From Anthoceros angustus (Eukaryota; Plantae; Anthocerotophyta), in NCBI GenBank assembly GCA_010909165.1, contig VJWM01000287.1, positions 63,175 through 127,174 on the forward strand: DNA of 64,000 bases, in the 5' to 3' direction. Position 1 is the first letter of the stretch, and each line of letters begins with the position of its first letter. The position numbers and the translations under genes are program-made. Positions 4,807-10,166 of this stretch are shown here, piece after piece. Below the pieces are notes generated by a model. The model worked only from the letters and a program-made list of their open reading frames with translations. It did no database searches and had not been told where the DNA came from.

Positions 4807-5309
4807 TTAAATCCATTCCTCACATGGATCGCATTTTTGAAAGATTCAATATTTTCTACTATAAAATTCTTTACTTGTTTTATTTGGTTCCAAGAATAAT
4901 ATTTAGACTGACCTAGCCCAATGCAAAGAAAAGGTTCTATAAATTATTTTAAAACTTAAAAATATTTTAAAATTATATAATGTCCTACAACTTTTATGGA
5001 CCTAAAAGTTTTGTGGAAATTTGGGAACTTATAAATCTGTGAATATTGCGCATCTTACACTAAGCATATTGACATGTTGGGGATACACTCAACTCAGGGG
5101 CTGAGACGCAGCCTGAGTGTGTGGACGTGATGGATCCCTCCTGATCCTAGATCCTAGAGTTGCGTATACCTATATATGTAGCTCTAGACATGTTTGTTCC
5201 GAGTCTTTCATGACCCACCCTGGAGGAGCAGGCTGCAGGCTATAGGCTGCAAGCTTACAAGAAGGTTCATGAGTTATAAGCGATAATTATGTATCAAGCA
5301 ACCAGATGC

Positions 5310-7924
5310 TCAGCCTTGGCTCGCTGCCTGTTCCTGCCCCTGGATTGTGATGTCCCTGTAGCGGACAATGTAGGGCAGGTCTCTGCCATGCCACTTCCCC
5401 GTCCATGCCCCGGCGTTCACATCGGACGCATTCCAAACCGAGGCGTAGTAGAAGACCGGCTTGAGTGGGTACGGTTTGTTGGCGGCCGCTTGCTGCAGCT
5501 GCGTCACCGTCCTCACAACCTTCCCGTCCACCACCCACCTGATGAAAACAAGAAGCCACAAGCTTAATTCCAGGAGTGAGAACATTTGGGAGCATGGCAG
5601 GGGATCCATGCATATGGGGTGGTGAAGGAAAAAGTTTGACGACTCACTGGATCTTGTCCTTGTCGTAGACGATGGTGTAGATGTGGTAGGCTTCGGAGCA
5701 GTCGAAGCCCAGGTCGATGAGGAGCTCGTGCGCGCCCACCCCGTTCACGTAGAAGTTGGTCTGGACGGCGTTCTTGTTGTTGCCCAGCCACTCGAAGTCG
5801 ATCTCGTCTTGCACGCGGCTGCCTTCCAGGGACGAGAGGTAGAGGCTGGAGAGCAGGCCGCTGGTGTCGCCCGCGGCGCACTTGAAGCCGCCGGAGAAGC
5901 GGCCCGACGCGTAGCTCTGCACGGACCGGAAGCGGCCCCCGCACCCCGTGGCGTCGTAGGAGATGGAGGCGTCCGAGAGCTCCACAGCCACGTTGTTGTA
6001 GCAGTAGTCGATGGCCAGGGGCCGCATCGGGATGGGCACGTTGCTGCTGGCCGCCGGCCGGGCGGGAGGCTGCCAGGGCAGGGTGAGCGGGGAGAGCACG
6101 GAGATGGAGTCGAAGTACATGGAGAAGGGCCCGTTGCTCCAGTCCACCGTGCCGGCGTAGGCCCCGTTGGCCACCGTCGAGGCGTCCCAGGTGTAGCCGT
6201 AGATGCTCCCGGGCTTGGTGGGGTAGGCCGACCCGGCGAAGGCCTTCGTCACCGTGCGCAGCAGGAGGTTGTCCACCAGCCACCTGCGGCTGGAAGTGTC
6301 AGACATGGGCGATCCTGGAAGGGGGATGGATCATGAATCCGAATTCATGCGGCAGGCAGGCAGGCAGGCAGGCAGGCAACCCACCACGTGCGTCCAGCAT
6401 GATTTGGTCTTGACAGGCAGAGGCGGCATCCAGGTGGGAGCAGGAGCGTGAGCTCAATGCAGCAAAGCAGAATGCGCAAACCATGCCTTAGGGTTTGATT
6501 GCACAGATCTGGAGGAAGCAGATGATTAGTATGGAGGATTGTGGAGGGGAGCAGCAGCAGGAGGATTGGGTGATGGTGGGCGGCGGGGTGGTGGGCGCTC
6601 ACATGATGGACTGGCTGTCCCACTTGATGGTGTACTGGTGGAACTTCACGGATGTGTCGAAGGAGACCACGATCACCTGCTGGTTGCCTGCGGAGTTGCC
6701 GTTTACGGCATAGTTGGTGACGATGCGGTTCGGCTTGTCGCCCAGGAAGTCGAAGCTGATGCTGTCACTGGCTTGGTCATTGGATGAAATCTGCAGGGTC
6801 ACAGCACAGGATGGATGGATGGATGGATGATGGTAAGTCTCAGGTTGCAGGGATGGCTGGTTGGTGTTGCAGGCAGGAAGAGAGGAGAGATTTGCTCACA
6901 TAGAAGCTGTTGCTGACACCGCAGGCCTTGACGGGAGTCCGCAAATTTGCTCTGAACACGCCCGAGGAGTATTTGTCCTGCGAGTGGAATTTCCCTCCTG
7001 CAGGAAGCCACAAATGGTTTTCAGGTTGTCGCTGTTGAAGCCGCTCAGAACTGAATGAATCCAATGCCTCCTGAAGGAGGGTTTGTTGGGTTTTTGCAGG
7101 AAGGAGCTTCAGCACTCACCGCAAGCTTGGTCGAGGCGGATGGTGACCGTGCTGTTTAGGATTGTGATGTGGTTTGGGCAGTAATCCACCGCCAGATTCT
7201 TCACCGGCCGCGGTGTCGGGATGGCTGGGACGCCCACGTCGGAAGGTTGGTATCCAGGGGCTTTCTCATTTGCCTTGTCCGGGCTCCCGTCATCATCCTT
7301 GTCGAGGATGCCTGGACTCATGATCTCCAGCAGTTGCTGTGCGCTGGCTACGCTGCGCCCGACCTACACACGTCCAAATATCTTTCAGGCTGGGCTGTCG
7401 CTCTCTCTCGCCTTACTGGATGCGTCAGATTGGGAGCAGGCGTCACAGACCTTGCGAAGATTGGAGCGAGCTTCCCGGGCTTCATTGGTCTTGACATGGG
7501 CCATGCCTTCGATGCAGTCGTCCAAGGAGGCCTCCACTGCGTACAGCTCTTGCGCAGTGCTGCCGGCTCCGTCGTCCTGGGCGATGAACTTGGCGGCCTG
7601 GTTGAGGCCTGTGCTGACATCGTCCAGCTCCTTGACGCAGTCTCCACCCAACACCGGGGAGTCTGCAACCTCCGCCAGGTACACCTGCGCGTCGTTGATC
7701 CTCGCCTTGGCTAACTGCAATGCGATGGCCTGCTTGGTGGCGGGGGCGGAATTCTGGTAGGACGAGGTGAAGCTTCTGCTCGGGGTGAAGTAGGTGCTGC
7801 CGTACTCTCCACCGAGCACCCCGGCCTCTGCTCTGCCGGGGAAGGCATGTCTGTCAGTGCCCAGAAACAGCAAGATGGCCAGCCAGGCGAGGATCGTGGA
7901 GGCCCTCCTCTTGGGGAGGCCCAT
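5310..7924 (-). CDS. Predicted secreted protein: signal peptide + PMEI-like helical domain + catalytically degenerate GH16/EG16 domain + intact EG16-type endo-glucanase domain (622 aa)
   Basis: Model: complement join(7451-7924, 7120-7363, 6900-6997, 6603-6790, 5648-6283, 5310-5538) = 1869 nt. All five introns are GT-AG and the phases match. Domain 2 has LAIDYC, GGRFRS, KCAAGDTSGL, LYLSSLEG, QDEIDFEWLG, DLGFDCSEAYH, KPVFYYASVWNAS, WTG..G.DLPY, which are hallmark EG16 motifs. Domain 1 aligns motif for motif but reads DSISFDFLG. The N-terminus has hydrophobic ILAWLAILLFLG and a PMEI-like DCVKELDD...LDDCIEG...LRKVGRSVASAQQLL. An upstream in-frame ATG at 7939 is an alternative start. Confidence 0.9.
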
Positions 7925-10166
7925 CTGCAGGGATCTCATAACAAATCCTGCAACGGCCTGCCCTTTATGGTGAGATGTAGTTGCGATTGTGTCTCTTTCT
8001 GCAGTCTCGTGCGTCGTGCGGATCCCCGATTACTATGTGGGCACTGGCTCCGGCACGAGCGCAGCACTGGGTCGCTCAGGCGCTTGACATCAAAGCTGCT
8101 TTGCCCCCTCTCGATTCACCAAACTCTCATGGCTGGGATCAGCTTTTTGCAGCTTTTGCAGAGACGGCAGCACCAGCCCCATCTCTGTCTGGCCTCGGCC
8201 CTCGCGCTCCAACTCAGGCGAAGGCCAATGAAAGGGGGTGGCGATTGGCGTGGAAAGGGCGGGGGTATTACCGGGTTAAGTAAACGGCTGAGGCGGTTAT
8301 GGACGCTGGTCCTGGGACATCGCCGGGTCCCGGGACTGCGGCACGTAACCGCAAACGGTTACCCGCTGTCCACTTAGGCTTCCACGGACCAGGGTACAGC
8401 GCTTCCATCAGCGCCCATGTGGAGGAGGACCGTCGCCGAGCTCCTGTCGCCGGCATCGAGGGTATCTATGCTCGCTAGCGTTTTGGTGAGACGGATTTGC
8501 AGCTCGCCGGGCTGTTAGTTGTTACGCCGAACTTCGCAGGTTCAGGTTCCTGTCATTTGTTGAAGCTGGTGGGCAAATTGATGCTCATCGAGTTGTTAGG
8601 GCCGGGTCAGTAGCTACGTGTTTCTGTTATGTTAACACTTGAGGGGTGGATTGTGTGTCAATCTGTGGGAAATTGGACGGTTATGGATGGGAAGTCATTC
8701 CTCTTGTCTGGGGAAGGGCCACGAGTGATGTCCTGACCGGTGACCGCAGACATGCACAGACTGAGGTGCACAAAAGATTCACTTGCAAAATGTTGCCACA
8801 ATCAAAGCTCATGAAAGTGAGTACTACTTGCTCATACTCGATCCAGCTCTGAACTCGTTGGCATACATATTTGGGACATGCGCTTGCGCGGTGAAGCTTC
8901 CGGTGGCTGGAAGTGCGCCAGGTAGTCAAATTTACATGTCTTCCCAGGCCCACATTTCCCTGATTCCGGCAGACCCCCAGCAGTGACGAATCGGGCATGT
9001 CCCGGAGCAGCGCTTCTAGTTTGCTGGCGCTGAAGAGTCCAGCCCTGCCCCTGCCAAAGAGGTCAATCGTGCTGGTCATTTGTCACTTGTTTTAGTTCCT
9101 CTCCTCAGCAATGCTTTGTAGCAGCTTCCCTGCTCCCTGAGTATTGACATCTCAGACCTTGTTGTTTTTGTTATTTTTTAACCATCACACAATACCTTTT
9201 GCAATCTTTTTGAATCTTAATTTATATGTGATTGTATATCATGAAACATAATAATGTATAACATGAAACATAATAATCTTTTTTTCACTACTTAGTTTAT
9301 TATAGAAATAAATAATTATCTTTATATATTTTTAATATTATTCAATTTGTTTCATGATTTTTCAAGATGGCTTTGAATGCGGGGGGCGCTGCATCTTTAG
9401 CTCCGATGGTAAGTAGGCCCTTTCTTATTCCAGACTATGACATATATTAGCTGCTATCATGAGTGAAGATTGAGCTGCAAATAAGTTGGCAAAAACATTC
9501 ATGATATCCTCCTCATATCTAAGTAGTATGTGTGTCAGGTGAGTCACAATGATGGCAAAATTTGAAGCCTAACTAACTTGCATCATCTAAAATTGCGATC
9601 TCTATATAGGTTTTGAACTTACGTCCTTCTTGATGTTAGCACGATACAATAAGTTTACAGGCTAGACACAATGTTAACCCCTAAAGGACCAACAGACTCA
9701 TTTTGAATGGTTCATCCTGCTGGGGCGGCCATTGAATTTTTTGGATGCCAAATTCTTTTGTAATTTGATGCTTGAGCTCGCGATGCCACAATCCTTTTGT
9801 ACCCTCCCATTCTTGAACAAAAAAAATGGCCATCACCATAGCCTTTTATGCCCGATGGATCGGAAAGATTCCTACATATGCCCTCAAACCATCCAGGTGT
9901 ACTTTTGGTTTGCGCACGTTCCCTCTCACACAATTGCGACTAAATCAAGTGACAATACACATACAGTTGGGTGTCCCGGTGTGCTTTGTATGGCAGTTGA
10001 TTGAATCGAAAAACTTTTGGCATGTATAGACTCATCATATGTGGCCAATTTTTGCGAGGGTGCTCAGCCCTGGTTCTTCATGTGGGCATAATGTTTGCTC
10101 AGCAATCGGATGGAAGATGGTCCTAATCGAGGTAAGATGTCGTGCCTCGTGGGTATGGCATGGTAT

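What the first reader, a model, noticed from the sequence alone, without database searches (positions are those of the whole stretch)
5310..7924. Secreted PMEI-like / pseudo-EG16 / EG16 triple-domain protein
Seen: a clean 6-exon ORF joining a signal peptide, a PMEI-like helical bundle (only the second Cys pair; the N-terminal hairpin Cys pair is absent) and two EG16-type GH16 domains. Known: characterised EG16s (poplar, grape) are single-domain proteins without signal peptides, and PMEI domains normally stand alone or precede a pectin methylesterase. Inference: a novel cell-wall or defence enzyme coupling a pectin-enzyme inhibitor or pro-domain to a beta-glucan/xyloglucan hydrolase. The basic or processing site usual in pro-PMEs is not obvious in the linker.
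Basis: partly seen in the sequence, partly recalled or inferred. Interest (0 to 1): 0.8.

Follow-up and report, generated by a model that had tools for sequence, protein, structure and literature searches.

The report
Secreted three-part hornwort GH16 glucanase
This is a real, transcribed plant gene for a secreted cell-wall enzyme that joins a small helical domain resembling pectin-enzyme inhibitors, a catalytically dead glucanase copy and a live glucanase copy; the same design is conserved from pond algae to ferns, and I found no description of it in the papers I could read.

Summary
On the minus strand, six exons (7924-5310) give a 622-aa ORF with GT..AG at all five introns. Spliced transcript contigs from the same organism and from a relative about 95% identical confirm every junction. 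One contig joins the helical-domain exon to the GH16 exons, so "separate genes" is refuted.

Domain 2 has an intact DEIDFE motif and its best solved relative is grape EG16 (1.5e-36). Domain 1 has DSISFD, with no nucleophile.

The N-domain is a four-helix bundle with two invariant Cys. It resembles a PMEI (pectin methylesterase inhibitor), but the support is only moderate:
- Pfam 22.4 bits, below the cut-off of 29.
- PMEI and invertase inhibitor chains are the top hits in two PDB fold searches and in a language-model search.
- A shape-only search returns generic bundles.

The gene is not a one-off. The same architecture occurs in mosses, lycophytes and ferns. The dead+live tandem also occurs in Zygnematophyceae. 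All members are annotated only as "hypothetical/GH16". Domain 2 lies outside the canonical EG16 clade and may belong to the uncharacterised "EG16-2" group.

Most likely function: a wall endo-beta-glucanase with a binding-type pseudo-domain and a PRO-like N-domain. This function is inferred, not shown.

The scan noted this same stretch twice, and a possible paralog elsewhere in the genome.

The parts
5310..7924 (-). Whole coding region: six exons (7924-7451, 7363-7120, 6997-6900, 6790-6603, 6283-5648, 5538-5310, stop at 5312-5310), 622 aa. An alternative in-frame ATG lies at 7939.
   Evidence: ORF and splice check. All five junctions are seen in spliced contigs of X1, four of them also exactly in X2.
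7856..7924 (-). Predicted signal peptide (about aa 1-23): MGLPKRR followed by the hydrophobic core ILAWLAILLFLG.
   Evidence: Hydropathy scan, peak 3.05. Homologs have similar leaders. No SignalP run was possible.
7313..7741 (-). PMEI-like four-helix bundle (about aa 62-175). It is encoded by the end of exon 1 and the first 17 codons of exon 2 and is interrupted by intron 1 (7450-7364). Invariant Cys96 is at 7639-7637 and Cys137 at 7516-7514.
   Evidence: Pfam PMEI E 1.4e-4, 22.4 bits, below the cut-off of 29. Family alignment. AF2 model of the fern homolog's domain, pLDDT 87.8. PMEI or invertase inhibitor ranks first in Foldseek, VIA-wide and ESM features.
7223..7312 (-). Asp/Pro/Ser-rich flexible linker (about aa 176-205).
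   Evidence: The matching region of the fern homolog is modelled as disordered, pLDDT below 50. Its length varies among homologs, and the relative has an in-frame 21-nt insertion at about 7230.
6088..7222 (-). GH16 domain 1 (about aa 206-400), catalytically dead. It spans exons 2-5 with introns 2, 3 and 4. The degenerate motif DSISFD lies at 6766-6749.
   Evidence: Pfam GH16 on exon 4 (8.4e-11) and exon 5. Motif comparison. The land-plant d1 clade has 99 SH-aLRT. It is 51-55% identical to fern and moss d1.
6028..6087 (-). Short Pro-rich linker between the two GH16 domains (about aa 401-420).
   Evidence: Domain envelopes from hmmsearch. Conserved SPL...W.PP motif in the family consensus.
5322..6027 (-). 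GH16 domain 2 (about aa 421-619), EG16-like with an intact catalytic motif. E495-I-D497-F-E499 is encoded at 5805-5791. Intron 5 is 5647-5539.
   Evidence: Pfam GH16 5.7e-32. Best PDB match is VvEG16 5dzg, 1.5e-36. Motif. Tree.
4991..5309 (-). 3' untranslated region (at least this long).
   Evidence: X1 contig record 1 runs 4991-5535 and is joined to 5645-5784.
7925..8049 (-). 5' untranslated region (at least this long). It contains the alternative ATG at 7939.
   Evidence: X2 contig record 19 reaches 8049. The single-base indels in the relative lie only upstream of 7939.

Best explanation
The gene encodes a secreted, modular cell-wall protein. It is the hornwort member of a family conserved in non-seed streptophytes.

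Shown:
- It is one spliced transcript.
- It has an N-terminal hydrophobic leader, a four-helix bundle with one conserved Cys pair, a flexible linker, a GH16 beta-jelly-roll lacking the catalytic nucleophile and middle Asp, and a second GH16 domain with the full ExDxE motif that is most similar to EG16 endo-glucanases.
- The dead domain is as well conserved as the live one.

Inferred mechanism:
- Domain 2 is an apoplastic endo-beta-1,4-glucanase of EG16 type, acting on mixed-linkage glucan, xyloglucan or cellulose-like chains.
- Domain 1 arose by an ancient internal duplication. It now serves as a carbohydrate-binding or cleft-extending module that targets or positions the substrate. The glucanase-like domain of insect beta-glucan recognition proteins works in a comparable way.
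- The PMEI-like bundle plays the part that the PRO region plays in group-2 pectin methylesterases. That is, it is a folding, trafficking or auto-inhibitory module, or a docking module for another wall protein. It is probably not a free-standing inhibitor.
For: Gene and transcript.

Domains.

Catalytic motifs: d2 has DEIDFE[FW]LG in nearly all family members. d1 lacks the nucleophile Glu in every member, from Zygnematophyceae to ferns.

d1 keeps the structural core but loses cleft residues:
- Only 26 of the 51 columns conserved in active domains are kept.
- Lost columns include the catalytic E and D, QTN, the HE/RE Glu and the EG loop.

d1 is under strong constraint:
- It is 51-55% identical among hornwort, fern and moss, against 52-63% for d2.
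- It is the best conserved part against the related contig L001: exons 3 and 4 are 84% and 87% identical, exons 5 and 6 are 73% and 78%, and exon 1 is 40%.

Internal duplication: the introns before WLVDN (d1) and WVVDG (d2) sit at homologous positions in the same phase.

Family distribution.

N-domain:
- Pfam PMEI sub-threshold hits in two members that are not detectably similar to each other: the window at E 1.4e-4 and Mesotaenium P0020 at E 6e-4.
- The Foldseek top 7 are all PMEI or invertase inhibitor chains.
- The VIA-wide top hit is 1x8z_A at Z 15.2, with 1xg2_B and 1rj1_A at ranks 4 and 7 of 48,161 chains.
- The ESM-feature nearest named clusters are all PMEI.
- The two invariant Cys lie at the start of helix 2 and the end of helix 3.

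Literature: EG16 activities and wall localisation (PMC9887094); signal peptides in EG16-2 (PMC8711696).
Against: - No enzymatic, binding or localisation data exist for any family member.
- The PMEI link is weak by sequence: the window's score is below Pfam's cut-off, only 1 of 12 land-plant N-domains hits PMEI at E<=0.1, and the family profile finds no PMEI among PDB sequences.
- Many unrelated four-helix bundles score nearly as well by shape. The ESM Atlas shape search returns only generic bacterial bundles.
- No basic processing motif of the PME PRO type is present.
- Inter-domain packing could not be inspected, because coordinates and PAE are not returned, so auto-inhibition is untested.
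- Selaginella d2 has DEIIFE, so activity may not be universal.
- The signal peptide was judged by hydropathy only.
Confidence: 0.6

Rival explanations
1. The N-terminal domain is a generic disulfide-stapled four-helix bundle with no evolutionary link to PMEI or invertase inhibitors. It acts only as a spacer, an oligomerisation module or a docking module. The rest of the reading (dead plus live GH16, secreted glucanase) stands.
For: - The Pfam score is below the gathering cut-off, and 11 of 12 land-plant members do not hit PMEI.
- The profile search of PDB sequences finds DesK-type helices, not PMEI.
- VIA-wide gives Z 13-15 to unrelated bundles such as TTYH, Rogdi and designed proteins.
- The Atlas shape search gives only bacterial bundles.
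- The N-terminal hairpin and the first Cys pair of PMEI are absent.
Against: - Four methods that use sequence information all put PMEI first: the Pfam HMM, Foldseek 3Di+AA, VIA-wide rank 1 and ESM features.
- A second, very distant member (Mesotaenium) hits the same Pfam family independently.
- By my recollection of the PMEI structures, the conserved Cys pair sits where PMEI's second disulfide links helices 2 and 3.
Confidence: 0.3
2. The protein is bifunctional. The N-domain is a true inhibitor of pectin methylesterase or of invertase/fructosidase, acting in trans, possibly after release from the flexible linker. One secreted protein would then lower pectin de-esterification while cutting beta-glucans.
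For: - The best fold and feature matches are bona fide inhibitors.
- A long disordered linker could allow independent action or cleavage.
- In some Closterium-type members the N-terminal module is DUF642 instead. From my own knowledge, untested here, that family has been reported to bind a PME catalytic domain. If so, the link to pectin enzymes recurs.
Against: - The conserved N-domain residues are mainly hydrophobic-core residues and the two Cys. No conserved surface patch is evident.
- The N-terminal hairpin is missing. From knowledge of PMEI/CIF structures, that hairpin contributes to stability and target binding.
- The N-domain evolves much faster than the GH16 parts (40% against 73-87% identity to L001).
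- No processing motif is present.
Confidence: 0.12
3. Domain 2 is mainly a transglycosylase (XET/hetero-transglycosylase-like) and not a hydrolase. The dead domain would hold the donor or acceptor polysaccharide, making the protein a wall cross-linker.
For: - GH16 retaining chemistry allows both outcomes.
- The family branches near the EG16/EG16-2/XTH radiation (PMC8711696).
- A second glycan-binding domain would suit a two-substrate reaction.
Against: - Domain 2 lacks the XET_C C-terminal extension typical of XTHs; Pfam finds only PF00722 in exon 6.
- Its closest solved relative is the hydrolase VvEG16.
- Characterised EG16s are hydrolases (PMC9887094).
Confidence: 0.15
4. The fusion is an annotation or reading artefact: two or three neighbouring genes (a PMEI gene and GH16 genes) wrongly joined.
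For: None beyond the prior that first-stage gene models are unverified.
Against: - Single spliced contigs from two organisms run from exon 1 through exon 5.
- Domains 1 and 2 are joined inside exon 5 itself.
- The same order of parts is found in full-length proteins of ferns, mosses and Selaginella, and in contig L001.
Confidence: 0.01

Closest known systems
EG16 endo-glucanases (GH16; VvEG16, PtEG16, PpEG16; PDB 5dze/5dzf/5dzg)
   Same: - Domain 2 has the same beta-jelly-roll family and an intact ExDxE motif.
- It has no XET_C extension.
- VvEG16 is its best solved match (1.5e-36).
- Both are wall-associated (PMC9887094).
   Different: - Canonical EG16s are about 200 aa, single-domain, lack a signal peptide, are single-copy and are about 70% identical across plants (PMC9887094).
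- This protein is 622 aa with a leader and two extra domains.
- Its domain 2 is only 41-45% identical to canonical EG16 and lies outside their clade.
EG16-2 clade (Behar et al. 2018; discussed in PMC8711696 and bioRxiv 10.1101/835561)
   Same: - GH16 proteins close to EG16, with predicted signal peptides.
- Found in charophytes (Klebsormidium, Penium) and biochemically uncharacterised.
- As I recall it, the 2018 abstract mentions an N-terminal extension.
- Zygnematophyte relatives of this gene cluster with its domain 2.
   Different: - The readable literature treats EG16-2 as charophycean and single-domain.
- The readable papers that discuss EG16-2, and my full-text searches, do not mention a PMEI-like bundle, a dead GH16 domain, or members in bryophytes, lycophytes and ferns.
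- The defining paper could not be read here, so identity with EG16-2 is not established.
PRO region of group-2 (type I) pectin methylesterases, and free PMEI/invertase inhibitors (PF04043; PDB 1x8z, 1xg2, 1rj1)
   Same: - A four-helix bundle with a disulfide between helices 2 and 3.
- It is placed N-terminal to a secreted wall enzyme in one polypeptide.
- These are the top fold and feature matches.
   Different: - The downstream enzyme is a GH16 glucanase, not a PME.
- The N-terminal helical hairpin and the first Cys pair are absent.
- The Pfam score is below the cut-off.
- There is no RRLL/RKLL-type processing site.
Insect beta-1,3-glucan recognition proteins (betaGRP/GNBP), with a catalytically inactive GH16-like domain
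   Same: A GH16 fold that has lost its catalytic residues is kept under selection. From established knowledge, it serves recognition or binding and not hydrolysis. This is a precedent for the role proposed for domain 1.
   Different: - The lineage is unrelated (animal immunity).
- The dead domain there stands with CBM39, not beside a live GH16 copy.
- No homology beyond the GH16 fold was tested here.
Tandem EG16-EG16 proteins of panicoid grasses (Paspalum P0012, Miscanthus P0160)
   Same: Two GH16 domains in one polypeptide.
   Different: - Both grass domains are live canonical EG16 copies from a recent duplication; they sit together inside the EG16 clade.
- They have no leader and no helical N-domain.

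Membership tests
GH16 (Pfam PF00722) | Significant match to the GH16 beta-jelly-roll profile | tested here: met
   Exon 4 scores 8.4e-11, exon 5 scores 5.7e-32 (two stretches) and exon 6 scores 3.2e-6, all above the cut-off of 22 bits.
GH16 (Pfam PF00722) | Catalytic ExDxE motif (nucleophile Glu, Asp, acid/base Glu) | tested here: met
   Met for domain 2 (E495, D497, E499; DEIDFEWLG). Not met for domain 1 (DSISFDFLG).
Canonical EG16 | Falls in the EG16 clade, about 70% identity across species | tested here: not met
   Domain 2 is 41-45% identical to Glycine, Psilotum and Taxus EG16. The canonical EG16 clade (98 SH-aLRT) excludes it.
Canonical EG16 | Single GH16 domain without a signal peptide | tested here: not met
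   The protein is 622 aa with a hydrophobic N-terminal leader and two further domains. The EG16 definition is from PMC9887094.
Canonical EG16 | No XET_C C-terminal extension | tested here: met
   Exon 6 matches only PF00722, and the protein ends about 10 residues after the last strand.
EG16-2 | Clusters with reference EG16-2 sequences (Klebsormidium, Penium) | tested here: inconclusive
   The only Klebsormidium sequence obtained (P0028) sits in an unresolved polytomy with the zygnematophyte and land-plant domains.
EG16-2 | Predicted signal peptide (PMC8711696) and N-terminal extension (recalled from the 2018 abstract) | tested here: met
   A hydrophobic leader and about 400 residues lie upstream of the live domain. 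The criterion itself rests partly on memory.
PMEI / invertase inhibitor (PF04043) | Pfam score at or above the gathering cut-off (29 bits) | tested here: not met
   22.4 bits, E 1.4e-4. Only 1 of 12 land-plant members hits at E<=0.1. Mesotaenium P0020 scores 20.4 bits.
PMEI / invertase inhibitor (PF04043) | Up-down four-helix bundle superposable on solved PMEI/CIF | tested here: met
   Tested on a model of the fern homolog's N-domain (pLDDT 87.8). Foldseek ranks 1-7 are PMEI/CIF, with TM 0.50-0.59. VIA-wide puts 1x8z_A first at Z 15.2. Unrelated bundles score nearly as high.
PMEI / invertase inhibitor (PF04043) | Four conserved Cys forming two disulfides, including one in the N-terminal helical hairpin | tested here: not met
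   Only Cys96 and Cys137 are present and conserved. The hairpin region is absent or disordered across the family.
PMEI / invertase inhibitor (PF04043) | Inhibits PME or invertase | not testable with these tools
   This needs biochemical assays.
PME-type PRO region | Basic tetrad (RRLL/RKLL-like) processing site between the PRO domain and the enzyme | tested here: not met
   No R[RK][LKMV][LMV] motif occurs in the first 300 residues of the window protein or of 9 of 10 homologs.

The most novel reading that the evidence does not exclude
A three-part wall enzyme that predates land plants. In it, a PMEI-type domain gates or docks a glucanase, and a 500-million-year-old pseudo-GH16 domain reads the polysaccharide. 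This would couple pectin status to beta-glucan or xyloglucan cleavage. The system was lost in seed plants. It would be the first PMEI-fold domain shown to regulate a non-pectin, non-invertase enzyme.
Probability: 0.15. Interest if true: 0.75.

Novelty: new variant of a known kind. Interest (0 to 1): 0.55.

Why it matters
EG16-type glucanases are seen as the link between bacterial licheninases and the large XTH family that remodels plant walls, yet their role in the plant is unclear. This gene shows that non-seed plants and their closest algal relatives keep a second, secreted EG16-like lineage with two unreported accessory parts. One is an ancient, strongly conserved dead GH16 copy. The other is a PMEI-like bundle.

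This gives concrete, testable hypotheses in tractable models, since Physcomitrium patens PHYPA_012418 and Anthoceros both carry the gene:
- Pseudo-enzyme domains may act as glycan readers.
- PMEI-fold domains may regulate enzymes other than PME and invertase.

It also corrects database annotation. All members are currently labelled "hypothetical" or "GH16 domain-containing".

Tried and rejected
- **Joined protein not searched.** All searches used single exons by reference or stored homologs. The joined model was built only inside scripts, for the ORF check, domain extraction, motif table and tree.
- **PDB sequence search with the N-domain profile.** It found only DesK-type helices and no PMEI.
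- **ESM Atlas shape search of the N-domain model.** It gave generic bacterial bundles and is not informative.
- **HMM of land-plant N-domains against zygnematophyte N-regions.** Not significant (best E 0.034), so homology of the N-regions across that split is not shown by sequence.
- **Finding the window's own protein in the protein collections.** Two word-indexed searches did not return it, so full-length folding used the fern homolog P0151.
- **Reading Behar et al. 2018.** The paper is not held. No supplements of PMC8711696 are held.
- **Literature searches.** Searches for EG16 plus PMEI, EG16 plus N-terminal extension, and tandem GH16 found nothing relevant.
- **Inter-domain contacts in the full-length model.** They could not be examined, because coordinates and PAE are not exposed.
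- **Mis-joined neighbouring genes.** Rejected on the evidence.
- **Canonical EG16 ortholog.** Rejected on the evidence.
Full report
**Observation**

The finding lies on the minus strand. Six exons (7924-7451, 7363-7120, 6997-6900, 6790-6603, 6283-5648, 5538-5310) join into 1869 nt (622 codons). There is no internal stop and all five introns are GT..AG. GC3 is 85%, in a window of 48.5% GC. An in-frame ATG 15 nt upstream (7939) could add five residues.

Public transcript contigs settle the gene model:
- In run X1 (same organism, 100% identity), contigs skip exactly the five predicted introns.
- In X2 (a related organism, about 95% identical), contigs skip four of them exactly; at intron 3 the joint is off by one base (skips 110, one odd letter between).
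- X1 record 3 and X2 record 19 each run from exon 1 through exons 2, 3 and 4 into exon 5. The helical-domain exon and the GH16 exons are therefore one mRNA.
- The junction between the two GH16 domains lies inside exon 5 itself.
- Coding indels in the relative are multiples of three.
- Single-base indels occur only upstream of 7939.
- Of the 40 best-supported interspecies differences, 30 fall on third codon positions.

**Method note**

Searches used each exon by reference, or stored homologs. The joined model existed only inside scripts, for the frame check, domain extraction, motif table and tree.

**The GH16 domains**

- Pfam finds GH16 in exons 4, 5 and 6.
- Exon 5 matches grape EG16 structures best (5dzg, 1.5e-36). 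It matches twice, because it carries the end of domain 1 and the start of domain 2.
- The two domains are 34% identical (E 7e-34).
- Domain 2 has DEIDFEWLG, with nucleophile E495, D497 and acid/base E499. Domain 1 has DSISFDFLG.
- The introns before WLVDN (domain 1) and WVVDG (domain 2) sit at homologous positions in the same phase. This fits an old internal duplication.

**The N-terminal domain**

- Residues 8-22 form a hydrophobic core after KRR. No signal-peptide predictor was available.
- Exon 1 hits Pfam PMEI at E 1.4e-4 and 22.4 bits, below the cut-off of 29.
- An alignment of 12 family N-domains shows four helices and only two invariant Cys, C96 and C137. The fourth helix runs on into exon 2.

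Evidence against a PMEI relationship:
- Only the window's member hits PMEI among the 12.
- The family profile finds no PMEI among PDB sequences.
- Unrelated bundles reach Z 13-15 in the VIA-wide search.
- A shape-only search of the ESM Atlas returns generic bacterial bundles.

Evidence for a PMEI relationship:
- An AlphaFold model of the fern homolog's N-domain (pLDDT 87.8) has Arabidopsis and kiwi PMEI and tobacco invertase inhibitor as Foldseek ranks 1-7 (E 1.6e-3 to 0.06, TM 0.50-0.59).
- 1x8z_A is the first of 48,161 chains in the independent VIA-wide search (Z 15.2). 1xg2_B and 1rj1_A rank 4 and 7.
- A language-model feature search with the window's own exon 1 gives PMEI clusters for all ten best named hits.
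- A very distant member, Mesotaenium P0020, independently gives a sub-threshold PMEI hit (E 6e-4).

I read this as a probable remote PMEI-fold relative that lacks the N-terminal hairpin and first disulfide. The probability is about 0.65-0.7. It does not meet the criteria for membership of PF04043.

**The family**

An exhaustive HMMER search with exon 5 found about 20 representative clusters that match it end to end, that is, with the tandem arrangement. Named members:
- Ferns: Adiantum and Ceratopteris.
- Lycophytes: Selaginella EFJ27978 and Diphasiastrum.
- Mosses: Sphagnum, Physcomitrium PHYPA_012418 and Ceratodon.
- Zygnematophyceae: Spirogloea, Mesotaenium, Closterium and Netrium.

All are labelled "hypothetical" or "GH16 domain-containing", and only PF00722 is precomputed for them. 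No seed-plant member appeared. The grass tandem proteins are recent live+live duplicates of canonical EG16.

tblastn of these proteins against the window aligns them along the whole gene, including exon 1.

Architectures differ by lineage:
- Full-length land-plant members share leader, helical domain, disordered linker, dead domain and live domain.
- The full-length model of the fern homolog has pLDDT 81, with a disordered linker at residues 153-205.
- Zygnematophytes have the dead+live tandem, or a helical N-region plus one live domain.
- Some carry DUF642 in front instead.

Contig L001, from a closer relative, has the same six exons. Identities to the window are 40% (exon 1), 38% (exon 2), 84% (exon 3), 87% (exon 4), 73% (exon 5) and 78% (exon 6).

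**Constraint on the dead domain**

- Domain 1 lacks the nucleophile in every member.
- It keeps only 26 of the 51 columns conserved in active domains. The losses are concentrated on cleft and catalytic positions.
- Even so, it is 51-55% identical between hornwort, fern and moss, similar to domain 2.
- It is the best conserved part against L001.
- In the tree, land-plant dead domains form one clade (99 SH-aLRT) and land-plant live domains another (91). Canonical EG16s form a separate clade (98) that excludes domain 2.

The pseudo-domain is therefore old, predating land plants, and functional.

**Mechanism**

Shown: one transcript, the domain order, the state of the catalytic motifs, and the conservation.

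Inferred:
- Domain 2 is an apoplastic EG16-type endo-beta-glucanase. Characterised EG16s hydrolyse mixed-linkage glucan, xyloglucan and soluble cellulose derivatives and localise to walls (PMC9887094).
- Domain 1 is a binding or cleft-extending module.
- The bundle acts like the PRO region of group-2 PMEs, or as a docking module. No basic processing motif is present.

Rivals are a generic bundle (0.3), a true trans-inhibitor (0.12) and a transglycosylase (0.15). An artefactual fusion is excluded.

**Comparison with what is known, and novelty**

The readable literature says the following:
- EG16s are single-domain and lack signal peptides.
- A sister group, EG16-2, was defined in 2018. It is treated as charophycean, carries signal peptides and is uncharacterised.

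As I recall the 2018 abstract, EG16-2 has an N-terminal extension. This family may therefore be EG16-2 or its land-plant continuation. I could not read that paper, and the tree does not resolve the point.

The readable papers and my searches do not mention a PMEI-like domain, a dead GH16 domain, or bryophyte, lycophyte and fern members.

My verdict is a new variant of a known kind: a real, conserved and uncharacterised architecture, not unique to this genome.

**Organism**

Earlier notes of this scan call the genome an Anthoceros hornwort. The composition and short introns fit, but I did not test this. The same stretch was noted twice by first readers, and a possible paralog was noted on another piece.

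Noticed in passing
L002:3001-4887: A family member (P0157, 628 aa) on an AT-rich (31% GC) ENA metagenome-assembly contig is encoded by one uninterrupted ORF. The window gene and L001 have five introns. It may be a retrogene or an intron-poor lineage.
   Followed up: partly
L001:192-2613: A Logan contig from a related plant carries the same six-exon gene. The helical-domain exon is only 40% identical, while the dead-domain exons are 84-87% identical. Large PPR editing-factor genes flank it.
   Followed up: partly
P0021, P0015 (Closterium-type proteins, not in the window): Some zygnematophyte dead+live GH16 proteins carry an N-terminal DUF642 domain (PF04862; 29.5 bits, above the cut-off of 27, for P0021) in place of the helical bundle. 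This points to swapping of wall-associated accessory modules.
   Followed up: no
P0012, P0160 (Paspalum, Miscanthus; not in the window): Panicoid grasses encode tandem live+live canonical EG16 proteins. The literature describes EG16 as single-domain and single-copy.
   Followed up: no
P0009 (Selaginella EFJ27978; not in the window): The 'live' domain of the Selaginella member reads DEIIFEW, with the middle Asp replaced by Ile. In that species both domains may have altered or lost activity.
   Followed up: no
P0016 (EukProt Leptophrys vorax transcriptome): A family member filed under the amoeba Leptophrys vorax groups with the Closterium-type members. It is probably prey (alga) contamination of the transcriptome.
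   Followed up: no
window:6342-6388 and 6803-6838: A (GGCA)n microsatellite lies in intron 4 and a (GGAT)n microsatellite in intron 3. The reads tool skipped both as repeats.
   Followed up: no
Both ATGs lie within the transcribed 5' region seen in X2.
   Followed up: partly
window:8006-8159: A separate 154-nt X1 contig lies just upstream of the gene. It may be more 5' UTR or another transcript. Contigs of organism C cover introns 1 and 2 unspliced (6945-7567), so that run holds DNA or pre-mRNA.
   Followed up: no
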